A stretch of 64,000 nucleotides of DNA from Chlorokybus atmophyticus (Eukaryota > Plantae > Mesostigma and Chlorokybus algae): the NCBI GenBank assembly GCA_009103225.1, contig RHPI01002069.1, forward strand, positions 397,378 through 461,377, in the 5' to 3' direction. Of the stretch, positions 415 to 18,011 are shown piece by piece. The number at the start of each line of letters is the position of its first letter. Within the stretch, counting starts at the first letter, position 1. Position numbers and translations under genes: made by a program. The notes under the pieces were generated by a model. It did not search any database, had not been told where the DNA came from, and saw only the letters and a list, made by a program, of their open reading frames with translations.

Positions 415-954
415 GTAAGATACGCATACCTTGCATGCCGTTTGTAACGGGAAGGCACATTAAATTACCACAAATTGACCATAAAAGCACCAAGTCTTTT
501 GTGGTCGAGTGGGCTGTGACATTGGTCATCGGAGCTTGAGACCCGGGTTGGATTCCTGCCTTGCACACGAATTCCGCGGTCGTTGTTTCTCGATCCAGTA
601 TCATCGTAAATGGTTATAAGTGCCATCGATGGGTCGCGACTTGCCTAATGGCAGTCGCGCCGGCGTTCAGTTGGCGCGGCAGAACGCGACCTGGCTGACG
701 CGATGCGACCTGTGGGGCCGGCAGCGGTGCGCTATGCGCGCGCTGACCGGTATGGGCCTAAATTGGTCGGTCCTTGGGCGGTGAGGCCGGTGACCGACCA
801 TAATAAGACCCCTGGGAAAATTCCCCGGCTGATGGGAACCAGCTGCCGAGGACGTCAGCGTTCTTAAGTGGGGGAATGTAACGGGAAGGTACATTATATT
901 ACCACAAATCGACCATAAAAGCACCAAATCTTTCACACCGATTGACGTCAAAGG

Positions 955-1612
955 ACCATGAATGGTCCGTACCTCTGGACCGGGATTGTCTCCTGCTAAG
1001 TGAAATTGGTGGACCATATATGGTCGGACTGTCAATGACAGTCGGACCATGCATGGTCCAAACCTCATATGAACGGTCCCATGTTTTTTTGGGGTCGCAC
1101 CATGTATGGTGACCTGTTTGTATAAGTTTGCAAGGACCATGTATGGTGCAATGCCCCCTGGCGCAGAAGACCAGGCATGGTTTGTTACTTCCACATGTCT
1201 GGTGATCGACAGTCGCACCATGCACGGTCCATGGATACGGACCGGAAGTCTTTGTTCAAACTAACATATTTCAGACCATGCATGGTGCGCTGCCCTCCTG
1301 GCTCAGTGGACCATTTATGGTGCCAGTCTGATCGACAGCCGCACCATGCACGGTCCATAGATACGGACTTTGTTGTGCATATGTGGTCCACAAGCGGTAC
1401 CATGCATGGTCCTAACAGACAACGCACCATACATGGTCTGATTGACAGTCGCACCATGCATGGTGTATCATGATGTCACAGCCATTGAAGCCATGCATGG
1501 TCCACAAGCGGCACCATGTCTGGTCCTAACAGACAACGCACCACATGGTCTGATTGACAGTCGCACCATGCATGGTGTGTCATGATGTCACAGCCATTGA
1601 ACCCATGCATGG
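955..1612. repeat. Left subterminal repeat array of CACTA (ACCATGCATGGT palindromes; ~113-bp tandem duplication at ~1385-1610)
   Basis: Repeated (G/C)ACCATGCATGGT and variants at ~1046, 1136, 1275, 1399, 1452, 1492, 1565 and 1603. Confidence 0.85.
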
Positions 1613-1796
1613 TCTTAGCACTGGTGCCTGCACCGTGCCCGGTGCATACAATCCGACACGCATGCAATTCTCAGAAATGCTGTAATGGACTGTCAAACGA
1701 CAGCCCATCAGTGTCAAGCCAGTGAGACTGTAGCTATAGTCTCCTACATGCACTTCAAGCTGCGGTTACAGGAGGTAACAGGAGCAGCTAACAACA

Positions 1797-2594
1797 TCAG
1801 TCTCTTGTGTTGCCAGCACCTTCGCCTGGAAGCCAGACTTGTGCTCTCCCTGGTTGATTCAGCCCCAATGTGAAGACACCCGCGACAGCCTTGCTCAACA
1901 GCATCTCTTGCAAACACTCAGCGAGTGCTTGTTGAGCTCTGCACAACAACTGTACTGTCACGTGCTTACACAAACAGTAACTTGACCATAGCACAGGAAA
2001 CCACCCACCTAAGAGGATGACGAGGGCTGTCGCGTCCACTGCCTCTTGGGTCGGAATGGCTTTCTCTTCTTTGCCTCGCTCAAAAGCCCTGCATTGTACC
2101 AAATCATCACTCTTGAAAACCAGCAAAGGACTGTCGTTAACTTGCTGCAGTGAAGTATGCATACCTGGTAGTTTGCGATTGGATCCCCACTCGCACCCTC
2201 CTTCAACATCTTTGTTGGACACCAACCACTTTTTCCTGGCAGCAAAGCTGACAATGGCTCTCAAGATCAGCTCGTCTGGCACACGCTCCATTCGGTCGGG
2301 GTTCTTGAATGCCAGCTGGTGACCATTGTGGAACAGCGTGTGCTCGATGTGGTGGTAGTACTCATACATGTCCATTGCCTCCTCTCTGGTGGGGGCGTTG
2401 GGCTTGGTGTTGCACACGATCCCCGCTGCAGTTCGCAAGTCCATGGCGGCGGCTTCTTCATCTTCACAGTCAGAGATCGCCCCAGCAACCTGCCTAGGAC
2501 CTAAAGTTGTCAGTGCAGTCCATTGGCGACTGTCAATACCATTGACAGTCTGCAGTGCGTTGATGACTGTCAAGAACTGCAACATGTAATGCAC
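1797..2594 (-). CDS. CACTA cargo ORF, unknown function (probably an exon of a spliced minus-strand gene spanning ~1.8-4.3 kb)
   Basis: 265-aa ORF with globular-looking composition. No motif recognised. Confidence 0.4.
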   Translation of the reverse strand: MHYMLQFLTVINALQTVNGIDSRQWTALTTLGPRQVAGAISDCEDEEAAAMDLRTAAGIVCNTKPNAPTREEAMDMYEYYHHIEHTLFHNGHQLAFKNPDRMERVPDELILRAIVSFAARKKWLVSNKDVEGGCEWGSNRKLPGMHTSLQQVNDSPLLVFKSDDLVQCRAFERGKEEKAIPTQEAVDATALVILLGGWFPVLWSSYCLCKHVTVQLLCRAQQALAECLQEMLLSKAVAGVFTLGLNQPGRAQVWLPGEGAGNTRD

Positions 2595-2879
2595 TTTGCG
2601 ACTGTCAAAGCGTGATCAATGGCTGCATTGGCGACTGTTCATCATGTGACAGCAGCCTAACAACAGCCCTTATTAACTCCTGTGTCTGTGCTGTGCCTGG
2701 CTGCGGGCGTAGGCAGCCGGTCCTTGATGCAACCCGGCACCGCAATGCGCTCATCGTTAGCGCATGCCTCACAGGGGCAGATGCCTCCGCTGGCCAAGAA
2801 CATCACGGGCCACTCCATCTCCCTGCCCTGCATGTTGTTGTGTTTAACACAAGAAATGCTCATACACTACACCATACAG

Positions 2880-15800: not shown

Positions 15801-16948
15801 AGCAGTGACATGAACTTATTCAGCATCTTTTGCGTAAGTGTCTCTGAGGTTTGTTGTTGGCAAAAAATGCCTGGTTGAGGGGTATCGCATTGTGCTAAAG
15901 GCATTGGCGGTGGGTGCATACTTTCTTGCGCCGCCGTGTCCAGTCGCATGTGGGCCATGGCAGTCTCCAAGTCAATCAACTGCCAAAAGAAACGGGCAGT
16001 CAACAACTGAAGTATGGTTCACAACGTTGTGCGCATAGCAATGGGCAAACATGACAGTCGCATGGACAGCCTCAGTGCATGTTCAACAACCGTGCGCGCT
16101 ATGAGTGAGCATGAGCAACATGATTAGTGCTCACCTTGCCATGGCACCTCAGGCAAGAGCAAATCCTCTGGGAGACTTCTTGCTGCTCGGGTTCTTCAAC
16201 AGCCTCTTCGTCACTAGTCAGCGCATGCAAGTTGTCAGTTGGCATGTCAACAGTCTCTTGCAGGTCTGATTGTTGCCATGGTTGCTGAGAGGGGGCAGCA
16301 CTGCTGGTGCCAGCCATGTTGACAGTCGGCTGTGGATCAGACTGTCGATTGAATTGCAGTGGAGCTGTTGCGGCACTGCTGGTGCTGGCAACATCGACAG
16401 TCGGCTGTTGCCTTGGGTGAAGTGTGGCTGCCACTCCACTGGTAGTGATGCTGGCCACATGGACAGTCGGCTGTTGATTTGCGGGAGGTCTACAGAAATC
16501 CAGCAGTTAGACCATATGCGCTGGCACCATCAACTGACAGCGATACACAGCAAGGCAGCTAGTGCACGTGCAGTTCGTTGACAGTCTCCTAGCATGTGAA
16601 GGACATATTACTGGTGAAGGCTGTCACAGCAACGATAGCTGGTGGCATGCACAGAAGACTGCGTGACCATTGCAGAGAAGCAAGTAAGGTCAGCAAGTTA
16701 ACTTACCGCTCATGCTGCTGGCTGATCTCACCATCCAGCTGGTCGTGCGTGGCCTCAACTTCATGGGCAGGCTGTGGGTTGTCAACATCGTGCTGCACAT
16801 CAGCCGCCTGCTCCGGCATGGGTAGGGAACTCTGTTGGCTGCGACGGCGGTGCCTACGACTGGTGTTCCTCTTATCGGCTGGTTGCAAGTTGATTCCCAG
16901 CTTGGTACTAATGTTCTTGGCAAACTTGACAGCTGTTTTGCTTGCCAT
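11991..16948 (-). CDS. CACTA/CMC transposase (TnpD-like), multi-exon, frameshifted at poly-T ~15216-15227
   Basis: LMLHSDGFN...INVVVLN and PFMKPMLDELEDL (Transposase_21-like); VFDIMHTL; WKAQEHQLFVQF; VFWCYAFERSVKLYVNTPSN (DUF4218-like W.YPFER motif); CxxC motifs upstream. Confidence 0.85.
12788..12860. repeat. (GT)n(GA)n microsatellite, probably intronic
   Basis: Direct reading. Confidence 0.95.
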
Positions 16949-17219
16949 TGATATTGCGCCAGCATTCGTCCACCAAGTACACCGCTAAGAGGCCGCCGCC
17001 GCCGCCACCAACAAGAGCGCCGCCGCCTGCTCCCTCCGCCGGCGCCACCTCACTGAGCGGTAAAACCCTACTGCACAGACCACGGTACTCTGAGCCCATG
17101 CACGTAAGTTGACAGTCGCACCATGCAAAGTGCTTGACTCTATGGAGTAACTGCACACCGTTCGATAAGCTTGGATCGACGGTTACTAGAGGCTGCCATG
17201 AAGACTTACCCTTGACAGT

Positions 17220-17895
17220 CGCATCATGCATGGTGCGACTGTCAAGGAGCTGAGCGTGCATCAGCGATGGTCCCAATCACTGTTCTGCGGACCAACCTAG
17301 AACCACGCATGGTCTGTACTCTCCCAGACCTTCGGACCAGGAAGAGCTTGGTGAAGTCAAGGACCATATACGGTACGCAAGAATACGACAATTTGGACCA
17401 ATAGCTGCCTGCTTAGCTTAAGGACCATGAATGGTCCACAACTTATTAGATTTTGAACCAGTAAGAGCTTGTTAAGGCGGCAGACCATGTATGGTGCGTG
17501 CTGCTTGTCCAAAATGACGGATAAGCTGAGCGTGCACCAGCAACGGTCCGCCCAATCGGTGTGGTTCGGACCAGTCCCATCGATTTCATTCACCGCAACA
17601 CATATGGTCCGGCATTGTTGTGGTCCAGACCACGCATGGTCCGTACACCCATTGACAGTCGCACCGGCAATATGCATGGTCCGGCTGCAGACCGTGTATG
17701 GTCCAGTCTTTCGCGGCCAGTAGGATCGGTAATATGTCTGATCCAGCCACGCACCACATCTGATGCGTGACTGCGCACCAGGATTCGGGACCCCGAACGG
17801 ACCAGGAACGGTCCGTCACTCGCGGACTAGGCAGTCCTGGCCCGCGGGATGCGGACCATGCATGGTCCTGGGGGTCCGTGAAAGGACCACACCTG
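17220..17895. repeat. Right subterminal repeat array of CACTA (GGACCA / CATGCATGGTCC motifs)
   Basis: Same motif family as the left end, e.g. GGACCATGCATGGTCC at ~17853. Confidence 0.8.
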
Positions 17896-18011
17896 GTCCT
17901 TGAACGTCAATCCGTGAGTTTGTGGTCGAGTGGGCTGTGACACCGTTGCTTGTCTGTAGTAGTGGCCATCATGAGGGTGCCAATTTGTTGGCCAACTGCT
18001 GCTTCCTGCAG

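What the first reader, a model, noticed from the sequence alone, without database searches (positions are those of the whole stretch)
934..17918. Giant CACTA transposon carrying a chromatin-writer plus RNase-like cargo: candidate autonomous anti-silencing or self-marking system
Seen: between matched TIRs lie a CACTA transposase (minus), a spliced plus-strand gene with SET, coiled-coil and KEN/HEPN-like parts, a divergent orphan gene, and an element-wide short motif. Established: plant Mutator-like VANDAL elements encode VANC proteins that bind short motifs accumulated along the element to undo silencing, and CACTA elements commonly carry TnpA and sometimes ULP1 proteases. I do not know of a described CACTA with SET plus KEN cargo. 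Inference: the element may encode its own histone methylation and RNA-cleaving functions to counter or exploit host silencing.
Basis: partly seen in the sequence, partly recalled or inferred. Interest (0 to 1): 0.88.

Follow-up and report, generated by a model that had tools for sequence, protein, structure and literature searches.

The report
Algal CACTA transposon carrying SET gene
This is a real 17-kb cut-and-paste (CACTA/EnSpm-type) transposon in the streptophyte alga Chlorokybus that carries a histone-methyltransferase-like (SET) gene and is peppered with its own short DNA motif, but the proposed RNA-cutting domain is unsupported, this copy's SET gene has premature stops, and SET-carrying transposons are already described elsewhere.

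Summary
The structure is real. Window 934-17918 is bounded by imperfect TIRs (20/24), a TTT/TTT 3-bp duplication and two arrays of a palindromic 16-mer found nowhere else in the 64 kb. Inside lie a spliced minus-strand DDE transposase (weak Pfam tnp2 hit, D-D-E and C(2)C readable), a spliced plus-strand gene with a bona fide SET domain (Pfam E=1.9e-9) plus about 600 residues of coiled coil, and a third gene with no homologues. A 7-mer, GACAGTC, is 25-fold enriched in the element and concentrated in its non-coding DNA.

Not supported:
- The KEN/HEPN reading rests only on one RNADAH motif. Pfam, PADLOC, PDB and a scan of 1.84 billion proteins found nothing, and the AlphaFold model is unusable.
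- The cargo frame carries three in-frame TAG stops.
- A perfect 719-bp duplication around an N looks like an assembly artefact.

Host is Chlorokybus atmophyticus. No other copy could be retrieved, so conservation of the cargo is untested. Giant EnSpm-superfamily (Plavaka) elements with a SET accessory gene are already described in red algae, and SET genes occur in HarbingerS, MuDR and Helitrons. Verdict: a new variant of a known kind, of moderate interest.

The parts
931..933 (.). Left target-site duplication, TTT
   Evidence: Identical to 17919-17921.
934..968 (+). Left terminal inverted repeat (24-bp core CACACCGATTGACGTCAAAGGACC). It runs into the first 16-mer copy.
   Evidence: 20/24 and 23/30 matches to the reverse complement of the right end.
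953..1578 (.). Left subterminal array: 14 copies of the palindromic 16-mer GGACCATGCATGGTCC (up to 3 mismatches). Several sit in the longer unit TTGACAGTCGCACCATGCATGGTG; a 112-bp unit is repeated twice.
1800..4326 (-). Third gene, an orphan: long ORF segments at 3988-4380 (ATG at 4326), 2883-3347 and 1800-2615. It is divergent from the SET gene.
   Evidence: ORFs of 131, 155 and 272 codons. No Pfam, PADLOC, PDB or protein-database hit. AF2 pLDDT 37.
4327..5073 (.). Intergenic region between the two divergent genes (presumed bidirectional promoter). It contains motif copies at 4544 and 5034.
   Evidence: The promoter role is inferred.
5074..11647 (+). Accessory ('cargo') gene of at least 10 exons. 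Order: Cys/His-rich N-terminal exon, acidic/poly-Q exon, SET domain, coiled coil, Pro-rich linker, long coiled coil, orphan all-alpha C-terminal domain.
   Evidence: ORF chain and GT-AG sites read. For example: donor 5323, donor 6060, intron 6883-6959, intron 7328-7440, donor 7621, intron about 8734-8798, intron 9022-9253.
6729..7327 (+). SET domain in two exons (about 6729-6882 and 6960-7327).
   Evidence: Pfam PF00856 E=1.9e-9 on the second exon. Best PDB sequence matches are ASH1L and SUV39H2 at E about 2e-3; the NHS motif reads INSVHGQQCEPN and ELPLDY is kept. The N-terminal part ITGVKLGLFARQDIAN was read.
8135..8137 (+). In-frame TAG no. 1 in the cargo frame, between ORFs 7895-8134 and 8138-8905 (same frame).
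9003..10441 (.). Two 100%-identical 719-bp copies (9003-9721 and 9723-10441) separated by a single N at 9722. Probable assembly artefact; it duplicates one intron and one coiled-coil exon.
10421..10423 (+). In-frame TAG no. 2 (its duplicate is at 9701-9703).
10880..10882 (+). In-frame TAG no. 3, between ORFs 10424-10879 and 10883-11644 (same frame).
11084..11644 (+). It contains RNADAH at 11372-11389.
   Evidence: No true homologue among 1.84e9 representative proteins. No Pfam, PADLOC or PDB hit. AF2 is all-alpha but pLDDT 44.
11994..16506 (-). DDE transposase gene of at least 5 exons.
- First D in LHSDGFN: codon 15030-15028.
- Second D in IAGDNPA: codon 14355-14353.
- C(2)C CRAC at about 14301-14290.
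- E in YAFERS: codon 13464-13462.
- Intron 14756-14395 is GT-AG and in phase.
   Evidence: Pfam Transposase_21 E=1.2e-4, below the cut-off. Sequence read.
15216..15226 (-). T11 homopolymer where the transposase reading frame changes. It is either a 1-nt indel (real or a sequencing error) or is bypassed by an unverified intron.
1027..17660 (.). Dispersed motif: 55 copies of GACAGTC and 30 of TTGACAGTC. Density is 5.6/kb in non-coding DNA and 1.7/kb in coding-like DNA of the element.
   Evidence: binomial p=1.6e-5.
17221..17899 (.). Right subterminal array: 10 copies of the 16-mer.
17884..17918 (-). Right terminal inverted repeat.
17919..17921 (.). Right target-site duplication, TTT.

Best explanation
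Window 934-17918 is one copy of an EnSpm/CACTA-superfamily DNA transposon of Chlorokybus atmophyticus. It carries three genes: a DDE transposase, a large accessory protein (Cys/His-rich N-terminus, SET domain, about 600 residues of coiled coil, orphan helical C-terminus), and an orphan third gene.

SHOWN
- The boundaries, the transposase, the SET domain and the coiled coil.
- The 16-mer arrays at both ends.
- A 7-9-nt motif (TTGACAGTC) that is half of the subterminal repeat unit and is also spread through the introns and intergenic DNA of all three genes.

INFERRED MECHANISM
- An element-encoded DNA-binding module recognises the subterminal unit and its dispersed half-site. Candidates are the N-terminal Cys/His exon, the C-terminal domain or the third gene product.
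- The coiled coil multimerises the protein, giving a TnpA-like role in end synapsis and promoter control.
- The SET domain thereby sits on the element's own chromatin, where it would methylate a lysine and bias the local chromatin state.

This particular copy is probably no longer autonomous. The accessory frame has three TAG stops, and the transposase has a frame change at a T11 run. The RNase (KEN/HEPN) function is not part of this explanation.
For: - Ends, TSD and arrays.
- Transposase. Termini of the 5'-CAC..GTG-3' type with 3-bp TSDs are the EnSpm criteria used in PMC12730594.
- SET.
- Coiled coil.
- Motif: 25-fold enriched, absent from the 46 kb outside, 3-fold denser in non-coding than coding-like DNA, and present in the introns of both large genes. 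This argues that the accessory gene has resided in the element for a long time.
- Subterminal unit TTGACAGTC+GCACCATGCATGGTG.
- No annotated parent gene: the C-terminal domain has no true relative among 1.84e9 proteins, while the host's own Chlat1 proteome is in the related collection.
- Long stop-free stretches on both sides of each TAG (256, 160, 152 and 254 codons) show the frame was coding until recently.
- Precedents for chromatin enzymes as transposon accessory genes: bioRxiv 10.1101/2025.02.11.637652, PMC12730594, PMC5735166.
Against: - Only one copy was seen, so conservation, copy number and selection are unknown.
- Three in-frame TAGs mean the full-length protein is not encoded here.
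- The SET NHS motif is altered (His replaced by Ser, plus a 4-residue insertion), so catalysis is uncertain.
- No DNA-binding domain was identified by any tool, so the link between protein and motif is pure inference.
- The transposase Pfam hit is below the curated cut-off, and the H..H spacing is 5 rather than 3-4.
- The TIR is imperfect at position 2. The alternative CAC..GTG boundary (936-17916) has no TSD.
Confidence: 0.55

Rival explanations
1. The cargo is a two-enzyme anti-silencing or self-marking device: a SET histone methyltransferase fused through a coiled coil to a KEN/HEPN ribonuclease that cleaves RNA (for example silencing RNAs).
For: The SET domain is real. The C-terminal ORF contains RNADAH (11372-11389), which fits the HEPN Rx4-6H motif and, from my own knowledge, the RNxxxH of Ire1 and RNase L. 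The predicted secondary structure is all-helical. The motif accumulates in non-coding DNA.
Against: There is no KEN, HEPN or any other family hit in Pfam at E<=1 or PADLOC. No PDB sequence hit appears at E<=10, although RNase L and Ire1 structures are deposited. Three spurious repeat-protein hits are all that 1.84e9 proteins give. The AF2 model has pLDDT 44 and cannot be used for fold comparison. By my rough estimate, RN...H is expected by chance about 0.02 times per 250 residues, and about 0.3 times over all coding sequence of the element. The domain lies downstream of all three TAG stops.
Confidence: 0.08
2. Incidental passenger (Pack-CACTA-type capture). The SET/coiled-coil gene, or part of it, was picked up from the host, does nothing for the element and is decaying.
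For: Three in-frame TAG stops. A degenerate NHS motif. Only this one copy was examined. CpG observed/expected in the element is the same as background.
Against: The gene is a complete multi-exon unit with its own upstream region, not a fragment. Its introns carry the element-specific motif at about 40 times the background density. No annotated protein anywhere, including the host proteome collection, shares its C-terminal domain. Long open stretches flank every stop.
Confidence: 0.2
3. The accessory protein is purely a TnpA-like transposition cofactor that binds the subterminal repeats and synapses the ends through the coiled coil. Its SET domain is catalytically dead or serves as a protein-binding module, with no chromatin-writing role.
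For: CACTA elements need a second, repeat-binding protein (established for En/Spm TnpA; my own knowledge). Subterminal arrays are present. A long coiled coil is present. The NHS His is lost.
Against: The catalytic-Tyr context ELPLDY and the overall SET profile are retained above the Pfam cut-off. The motif is spread through the whole element, not only at the ends, which end synapsis would not require.
Confidence: 0.15
4. Not one element. The TIR-like ends are chance or belong to different elements, and the genes between them are ordinary host genes or a nested composite.
For: The TIR is imperfect (20/24). A TTT duplication has roughly a 1-5% chance expectation. No empty site is available.
Against: Both 16-mer arrays lie exactly inside the two ends and nowhere else. 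The 7-mer motif fills the whole interval and stops at both ends: 55 copies inside, 6 in the remaining 46 kb. A transposase of the matching superfamily lies inside.
Confidence: 0.02

Closest known systems
Giant Plavaka elements (EnSpm/CACTA superfamily) of red algae with accessory genes PAG1-3 (bioRxiv 10.1101/2025.02.11.637652)
   Same: Same superfamily and the same size class (17.4-19.1 kb against 17.0 kb). Both have a DDE transposase plus several accessory genes, one with a SET domain (PAG2) and one of unknown function (PAG1). Both carry repeats proposed as self-binding sites.
   Different: PAG2 pairs SET with an N6-adenine DNA methylase (PF01555), and PAG3 is ParB-like plus a 2OG oxygenase. 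None of these domains was found here. Here SET is fused to a long coiled coil and an orphan domain. The termini are CAC.. type with a 3-bp TSD rather than the Plavaka termini listed in PMC12730594. The host is a streptophyte alga. Homology of the SET domains was not tested because no PAG2 sequence was available.
HarbingerS, Phytophthora MuDR and Helitron families carrying SET genes (Kojima & Jurka 2014, cited in PMC12730594 and in the Bostrychia preprint)
   Same: DNA transposons that have incorporated a SET histone-lysine methyltransferase gene as an accessory gene.
   Different: Different transposon superfamilies and different hosts.
VANDAL21/VANC21 anti-silencing system of Arabidopsis (PMC5735166)
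   Same: A short motif accumulated in the non-coding regions of the element, with local tandem repeats (for example 7367-7405 and 14519-14550), together with an element-encoded accessory protein.
   Different: VANDAL is a Mutator-like element. VANC has no enzymatic domain and causes loss of DNA methylation. No homology to VANC was detected, and neither binding nor any epigenetic effect was shown here.
Maize En/Spm (the type CACTA) with TnpA and TnpD
   Same: CAC-type TIRs, a 3-bp TSD, subterminal repeat arrays at both ends, a transposase with a tnp2-like core, and a second protein presumed to bind the repeats.
   Different: In En/Spm both proteins come from one transcription unit on one strand, and TnpA has no SET domain (my own knowledge). 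Here there are three separate genes in convergent and divergent orientation. The repeat motif also fills the interior. Transposase similarity to the plant family is weak (below the Pfam cut-off).
Retrotransposons carrying DNA methyltransferases in charophytes and dinoflagellates (PMC5890265)
   Same: Transposable elements of a streptophyte alga that carry an epigenetic 'writer' enzyme. A Gypsy element with a C5-DNMT ORF lies in this same window.
   Different: These are retrotransposons, not DNA transposons, and the enzyme methylates DNA rather than protein.

Membership tests
EnSpm/CACTA superfamily DNA transposon | Termini 5'-CAC..GTG-3' within terminal inverted repeats | tested here: inconclusive
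   With the TSD-supported boundary the ends read CACAC.. and ..GTGAG (position 2 mismatched; 20/24 overall). Exact CAC..GTG termini exist 2 bp further in (936-17916), but then no TSD is present.
EnSpm/CACTA superfamily DNA transposon | 3-bp target-site duplication | tested here: met
   TTT at 931-933 and at 17919-17921. Chance expectation is a few per cent.
EnSpm/CACTA superfamily DNA transposon | Transposase homologous to the tnp2/Transposase_21 family | tested here: inconclusive
   PF02992 E=1.2e-4, 21.8 bits against a cut-off of 28.6, covering profile positions 21-121. No DUF4218 or DUF4216 hit. No hit in protein-database, PDB or metagenome searches.
EnSpm/CACTA superfamily DNA transposon | [quoted passage not shown] | tested here: inconclusive
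   Read from the ORFs: D in LHSDGFN, D in IAGDNPA, CRAC as C(2)C, H in DIMHTL, E in YAFERS. The His pair next to the E is HIAGTCH, a spacing of 5 rather than 3-4. No alignment to reference transposases could be made.
EnSpm/CACTA superfamily DNA transposon | Subterminal repeat arrays at both ends | tested here: met
   14 and 10 copies of the 16-mer within about 650 bp of each end, none elsewhere.
SET-domain lysine methyltransferase | SET domain profile match above the curated threshold | tested here: met
   PF00856 E=1.9e-9, 38.3 bits against 22.4. PDB sequence matches are all SET enzymes.
SET-domain lysine methyltransferase | Cofactor and catalytic motifs (GxG, NHS/CxxPN, ELxxDY Tyr) | tested here: inconclusive
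   ELPLDY is present, and LGLFA is present in the upstream exon. NHSC is replaced by N-S-VHGQ-QCEPN, with the His lost at the aligned position.
SET-domain lysine methyltransferase | Methyltransferase activity and substrate | not testable with these tools
   Needs a biochemical assay on an intact copy.
HEPN / KEN ribonuclease domain | Rx4-6H catalytic motif | tested here: met
   RNADAH at 11372-11389. A single short motif can arise by chance.
HEPN / KEN ribonuclease domain | Detectable sequence homology to a HEPN or KEN family | tested here: not met
   No Pfam hit at E<=1. No PADLOC hit outside the coiled coil. No PDB sequence hit at E<=10. Only spurious hits among 1.84e9 proteins.
HEPN / KEN ribonuclease domain | Helical-bundle HEPN or KEN fold | tested here: inconclusive
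   The single-sequence AF2 model is all-alpha, but pLDDT is 44 and pTM 0.31, too poor for Foldseek.
VANC-type sequence-specific anti-silencing system | Element-specific short motif accumulated in non-coding regions | tested here: met
   GACAGTC at 5.6/kb in non-coding DNA, 1.7/kb in coding-like DNA and 0.13/kb outside the element.
VANC-type sequence-specific anti-silencing system | Accessory protein binds the motif and removes silencing marks | not testable with these tools
   Needs EMSA, ChIP and bisulfite data. No VANC-like family hit in Pfam.
Plavaka PAG cassette (red algae) | PAG2 architecture (N6-adenine DNA methylase PF01555 plus SET) and PAG3 (ParB-like plus 2OG oxygenase) | tested here: not met
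   Among all long ORFs of the element, only SET was found.
Pack-CACTA (captured host gene fragment) | Near-identical host parent gene; cargo absent from other copies | tested here: inconclusive
   No protein with the C-terminal domain exists in the library, and the host proteome is in the sister collection. The SET part could not be searched against long proteins because of the length filter.

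The most novel reading that the evidence does not exclude
A CACTA family of an early-diverging streptophyte alga encodes a sequence-targeted lysine methyltransferase. The protein, or a partner from the third gene, reads the 7-9-nt motif that the element has accumulated in its own introns, intergenic DNA and subterminal repeats, and writes a histone mark on the element. 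This would be an enzymatic 'writer' counterpart of the VANC anti-silencing system, evolved independently of the red-algal Plavaka PAG2.
Probability: 0.15. Interest if true: 0.8.

Novelty: new variant of a known kind. Interest (0 to 1): 0.42.

Why it matters
How transposons manipulate host chromatin is known mechanistically for very few systems, essentially VANC in Arabidopsis. Transposon-borne SET, TET/JBP and DNMT genes are being catalogued, but none has a demonstrated targeting mechanism.

This element pairs a SET gene with a clearly delimited, element-specific motif array in a small streptophyte-alga genome. If intact copies exist, that gives a tractable test of self-directed chromatin writing.

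It also adds streptophyte algae to the lineages where EnSpm-type elements carry SET genes. The same 64 kb holds a Gypsy element with a DNMT, hinting that TE-borne epigenetic enzymes may be a theme in this genome.

If the gene turns out to be private to this broken copy, the finding is only an annotated transposon.

Tried and rejected
1. TAG reassignment as the explanation for the three in-frame TAGs. Making TAG sense does not lengthen ORFs across the window more than making TAA sense, and much less than TGA. Rejected; CAG-to-TAG nonsense changes in Gln-rich coiled coil are the simpler reading.
2. Introns that would remove the TAGs. Many formal GT..AG pairs exist, but each would delete open, coiled-coil-coding sequence. 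For example, 407 codons carry a single stop. Judged unlikely.
3. Frame switches at 8611-8905 in the cargo and 13261-13397 in the transposase, first suspected to be frameshifts. Both are explained by short canonical introns: about 8734-8798 in the cargo, and about 94 nt running TCT|gtcagg...gtcag|CAA in the transposase.
4. Homologue searches:
   - The 370-aa transposase exon gave nothing, with a length filter of 203-647 aa.
   - The C-terminal domain gave only repeat-protein artefacts.
   - The third-gene exon gave nothing.
5. Retrieval of other copies. The exact-protein look-up of the neighbouring host gene is not on record. The metagenome protein scan and the 24-mer DNA scan were both empty. 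The viral scan with the transposase was empty. The viral scan with the SET exon found only a generic 150-aa viral SET protein.
6. Structure. Both single-sequence AF2 runs were too poor (pLDDT 44 and 37), so no fold search was run.
7. CpG depletion as a sign of methylation-driven decay. The element equals background.
8. Rfam and tRNA scans of the window were empty.
9. Reconstruction of an empty site from the flanks gave no informative ORF.

Full report
**Where the window comes from.** The 677-codon ORF at 25939-27969(-) is 93% identical to EukProt protein jgi/Chlat1/2101/Chrsp17S02702, an RNase E/G with a CBM20 domain. That protein maps exon by exon to 24105-27834(-). The window is therefore from Chlorokybus atmophyticus, an early-diverging streptophyte alga, or a very close relative. 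The host's annotated proteome is present in the protein collection I searched, which matters for reading the negative results below.

**Boundaries.**
- The left end (934) reads CACACCGATTGACGTCAAAGGACC. The reverse complement of the right end (17918) reads CTCACGGATTGACGTTCAAGGACC. That is 20/24 and 23/30 matches.
- Both ends are flanked by TTT: 931-933 and 17919-17921.
- Just inside each end is an array of the palindromic 16-mer GGACCATGCATGGTCC, allowing up to 3 mismatches. There are 14 copies at 953-1578, 10 at 17221-17899 and none elsewhere in 64 kb, against 0.43 expected.
- Several copies sit in a longer unit, TTGACAGTC-GCACCATGCATGGTG.
- CAC-type termini, a 3-bp TSD and subterminal repeats are the EnSpm/CACTA signature. 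PMC12730594 uses 5'-CAC..GTG-3' plus 3-bp TSDs as its criteria.
- One caveat: at the TSD-supported boundary, position 2 of the right TIR is mismatched. The exact CAC..GTG boundary 2 bp further in has no TSD.
- At 17.0 kb the element is large but, from my own knowledge, within the range known for CACTA elements.

**Transposase (minus strand, about 16506-11994).**
- A chain of long ORFs of 135, 286, 262, 378, 163 and 304 codons is present.
- They are joined by canonical introns. For example, 14756-14395 runs GCCG|gtacgc...tgag|AA and is in phase. A roughly 94-nt intron explains the frame switch at 13397-13261. The intron 13013-12771 contains a (GA)n/(GT)n microsatellite.
- Pfam gives Transposase_21/tnp2 at E=1.2e-4 and 21.8 bits, below the 28.6 cut-off.
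- Reading the sequence, the first D lies in LHSDGFN, the second in IAGDNPA followed by a C(2)C (CRAC), a His in DIMHTL, and the E in FWCYAFERS. This is the CMC arrangement described in PMC12730594, except that the His pair before the E is spaced by 5 rather than 3-4.
- The frame changes at a T11 run (15226-15216). That is either a 1-nt indel, real or a homopolymer sequencing error, or it is skipped by an intron I cannot verify.
- No homologue was retrievable: searches were all empty. The protein is therefore a very divergent member, and superfamily membership rests on structure plus weak homology.

**Accessory gene (plus strand, 5074-11647).** Exons with good donors (gtaaga, gtaagc, gtgcgt, gtaagt, gtacgt, gtcagt, gtatag) and pyrimidine-rich acceptors connect the following parts:
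- a Cys/His-rich first exon (5074-5322);
- an acidic/poly-Q exon (to 6059);
- the SET domain in two exons (about 6729-6882 and 6960-7327);
- short coiled-coil exons;
- a Pro-rich linker;
- a long coiled coil (9254-11083);
- a 187-residue C-terminal domain.

**The SET domain.** SET is solid, with PF00856 at E=1.9e-9 and 38.3 bits against a 22.4 cut-off. The nearest solved sequences are ASH1L, SUV39H2 and SET1 at E about 2e-3, which is too weak to assign a subfamily. The ELPLDY catalytic-Tyr context is kept. The NHSC motif reads N-S-(VHGQ)-QCEPN, so the His is lost at the aligned position, and activity is uncertain.

**The coiled coil.** It is supported by composition: E/K/Q/R/L/A makes up 0.64-0.69 of residues, with almost no Pro or Gly. 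The only family matches are to coiled-coil proteins such as GAS, liprin and SMC-like JetC.

**The 'KEN/HEPN-like' part.**
- The C-terminal ORF contains RNADAH (11372-11389), which fits Rx4-6H.
- Every test I could run was negative or unusable. There was no Pfam family at E<=1, no PADLOC hit outside the coiled coil and no PDB sequence hit at E<=10.
- In a full HMMER scan of 1.84 billion representative proteins, only three hits appeared. On inspection they are repeat-protein artefacts.
- The single-sequence AlphaFold model is all-helical but has pLDDT 44, so no fold search was warranted.
- The domain is an orphan, and the RNase reading is a motif-level guess.

**Integrity of this copy.**
- The accessory frame contains three in-frame stops, all TAG: 8135, 10421 (with a duplicate at 9701) and 10880. 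Each sits between long open stretches in the same frame, of 256, 160, 152 and 254 codons.
- A TAG-reassigned genetic code is not supported.
- Introns that would remove the stops are formally possible but would delete open coiled-coil sequence.
- The simplest reading is recent CAG-to-TAG nonsense changes.
- Separately, 9003-9721 and 9723-10441 are 100% identical and separated by a single N. This is most likely an assembly artefact. Single Ns also occur at 6089 and 51016.

**Third gene (minus strand, 4326-1800).** ORF segments of 131, 155 and 272 codons diverge from the accessory gene across a 750-bp spacer. Stretches this long are not expected by chance. Nothing matches them in Pfam, PADLOC, PDB or the protein collection within the allowed length range, and AF2 gives pLDDT 37. 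'Orphan' is confirmed.

**The element-wide motif.**
- TTGACAGTC occurs 30 times, all between 1027 and 17660, against 0.68 expected.
- The 7-mer GACAGTC occurs 55 times inside (3.24/kb) and 6 times in the other 46 kb (0.13/kb).
- Using whole stop-to-stop ORFs as 'coding-like', a conservative choice, the density is 5.6/kb in non-coding DNA and 1.7/kb in coding-like DNA (binomial p=1.6e-5). The same holds after removing the subterminal arrays and the duplicated segment.
- Copies cluster in introns of the transposase (six in intron 14756-14395) and of the accessory gene (6114, 6153, 7383, 7396, 7660, 9152, 9175). They also cluster upstream of both divergent genes and in short tandem arrays.
- Because the 9-mer is half of the subterminal repeat unit, the natural inference is that one element-encoded protein recognises both.
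- The motif's presence in the introns of the accessory gene argues that this gene is a long-term resident of the element, not a recent pick-up.

**What is known.**
- The Bostrychia moritziana genome preprint (10.1101/2025.02.11.637652) describes giant (17.4-19.1 kb) Plavaka elements of the EnSpm/CACTA superfamily with three accessory genes.
- PAG2 combines an N6-adenine DNA methylase with a SET domain. PAG3, which is ParB-like plus a 2OG oxygenase, sits next to tandem inverted repeats proposed as its own binding sites.
- The same text and PMC12730594 note SET genes in HarbingerS, Phytophthora MuDR and Helitrons, and TET/JBP genes in several superfamilies including EnSpm.
- VANC21 localises to non-coding regions of VANDAL21 and binds short motifs (PMC5735166).
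- The present element differs in host lineage, in termini (EnSpm-like rather than the Plavaka termini listed in PMC12730594) and in the architecture of the SET protein. It has no DNA methylase, ParB or oxygenase domain, and has a long coiled coil and an orphan C-terminus instead.
- I therefore rate it a new variant of a known kind.

**Mechanism.**
- Shown: the anatomy described above.
- Inferred: a DNA-binding part recognises the repeat unit and its dispersed half-site; the coiled coil multimerises, giving a TnpA-like role; and SET acts on the element's own chromatin. Candidates for the DNA-binding part are the N-terminal Cys/His exon, the C-terminal domain or the third gene product.
- I give the structural statement about 0.85 and the functional chain about 0.3. 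The stated overall confidence is 0.55.
- The main rival is incidental capture and decay (0.2).

**Limits.** No second copy of the family could be reached. The host genome is not in the DNA collections, and the element's proteins are not in the protein collections. The length filter blocked searches for long relatives of the SET and transposase exons. It is the first thing to do.

Noticed in passing
window 38499-50835, ORF 44494-45342(-): A Ty3/Gypsy LTR retrotransposon (aspartyl protease, RT, RNase H, integrase) whose ORF 44494-45342 hits Pfam C-5 DNA_methylase (E=2.6e-9, above the cut-off). The 836-bp LTRs are about 99% identical (39335-40170 and about 50000-50835), and extra tandem LTR copies run from 38499. 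DNMT-carrying retrotransposons are described for the charophyte Klebsormidium (PMC5890265), and that paper does not mention Chlorokybus. Two TE-borne epigenetic enzymes lie in one 64-kb window.
   Followed up: partly
window 9003-9721 and 9723-10441: A perfect 719-bp tandem duplication separated by a single N. It is probably an assembly or gap-closing artefact, and it duplicates an intron and a coiled-coil exon of the accessory gene. Single Ns also occur at 6089 and 51016.
   Followed up: partly
window 9066-9180 (duplicate at 9786-9900): A 115-bp near-perfect palindrome (35-nt arms, 100% complementary) inside intron 9022-9253 of the accessory gene. It carries motif copies and could be a hairpin or a MITE-like insert.
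   Followed up: no
window 16321-16462(-): Four motif copies fall in the first transposase ORF, where they encode a reiterated peptide (QPTVDVASTSSAA / QPTVNMAGTSSAA / ETVDMPT). Either the N-terminus is built from motif repeats, or this stretch is really 5' UTR or promoter.
   Followed up: no
window 24105-27834(-): Host gene for a chloroplast-type RNase E/G with a CBM20 starch-binding domain (Chlat1 Chrsp17S02702). It identifies the organism as Chlorokybus atmophyticus.
   Followed up: yes
window 35894-36492 and 12807-12861: A 600-bp (GA)n microsatellite in the host flank, and a 55-bp one followed by (GT)n inside a transposase intron.
   Followed up: no
window 52319-53392(-): An ORF with a weak ARC6 (plastid-division) alpha-solenoid hit (E=1.1e-4, just below the cut-off).
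   Followed up: no
L001 4749-5201 (IMGVR_UViG_3300028800_002444): A 150-aa minimal SET protein on a viral contig shares AIKDIQAGEE with the element's SET exon (45% identity over 44 residues). This is generic SET C-terminal similarity, not evidence of a relationship.
   Followed up: partly
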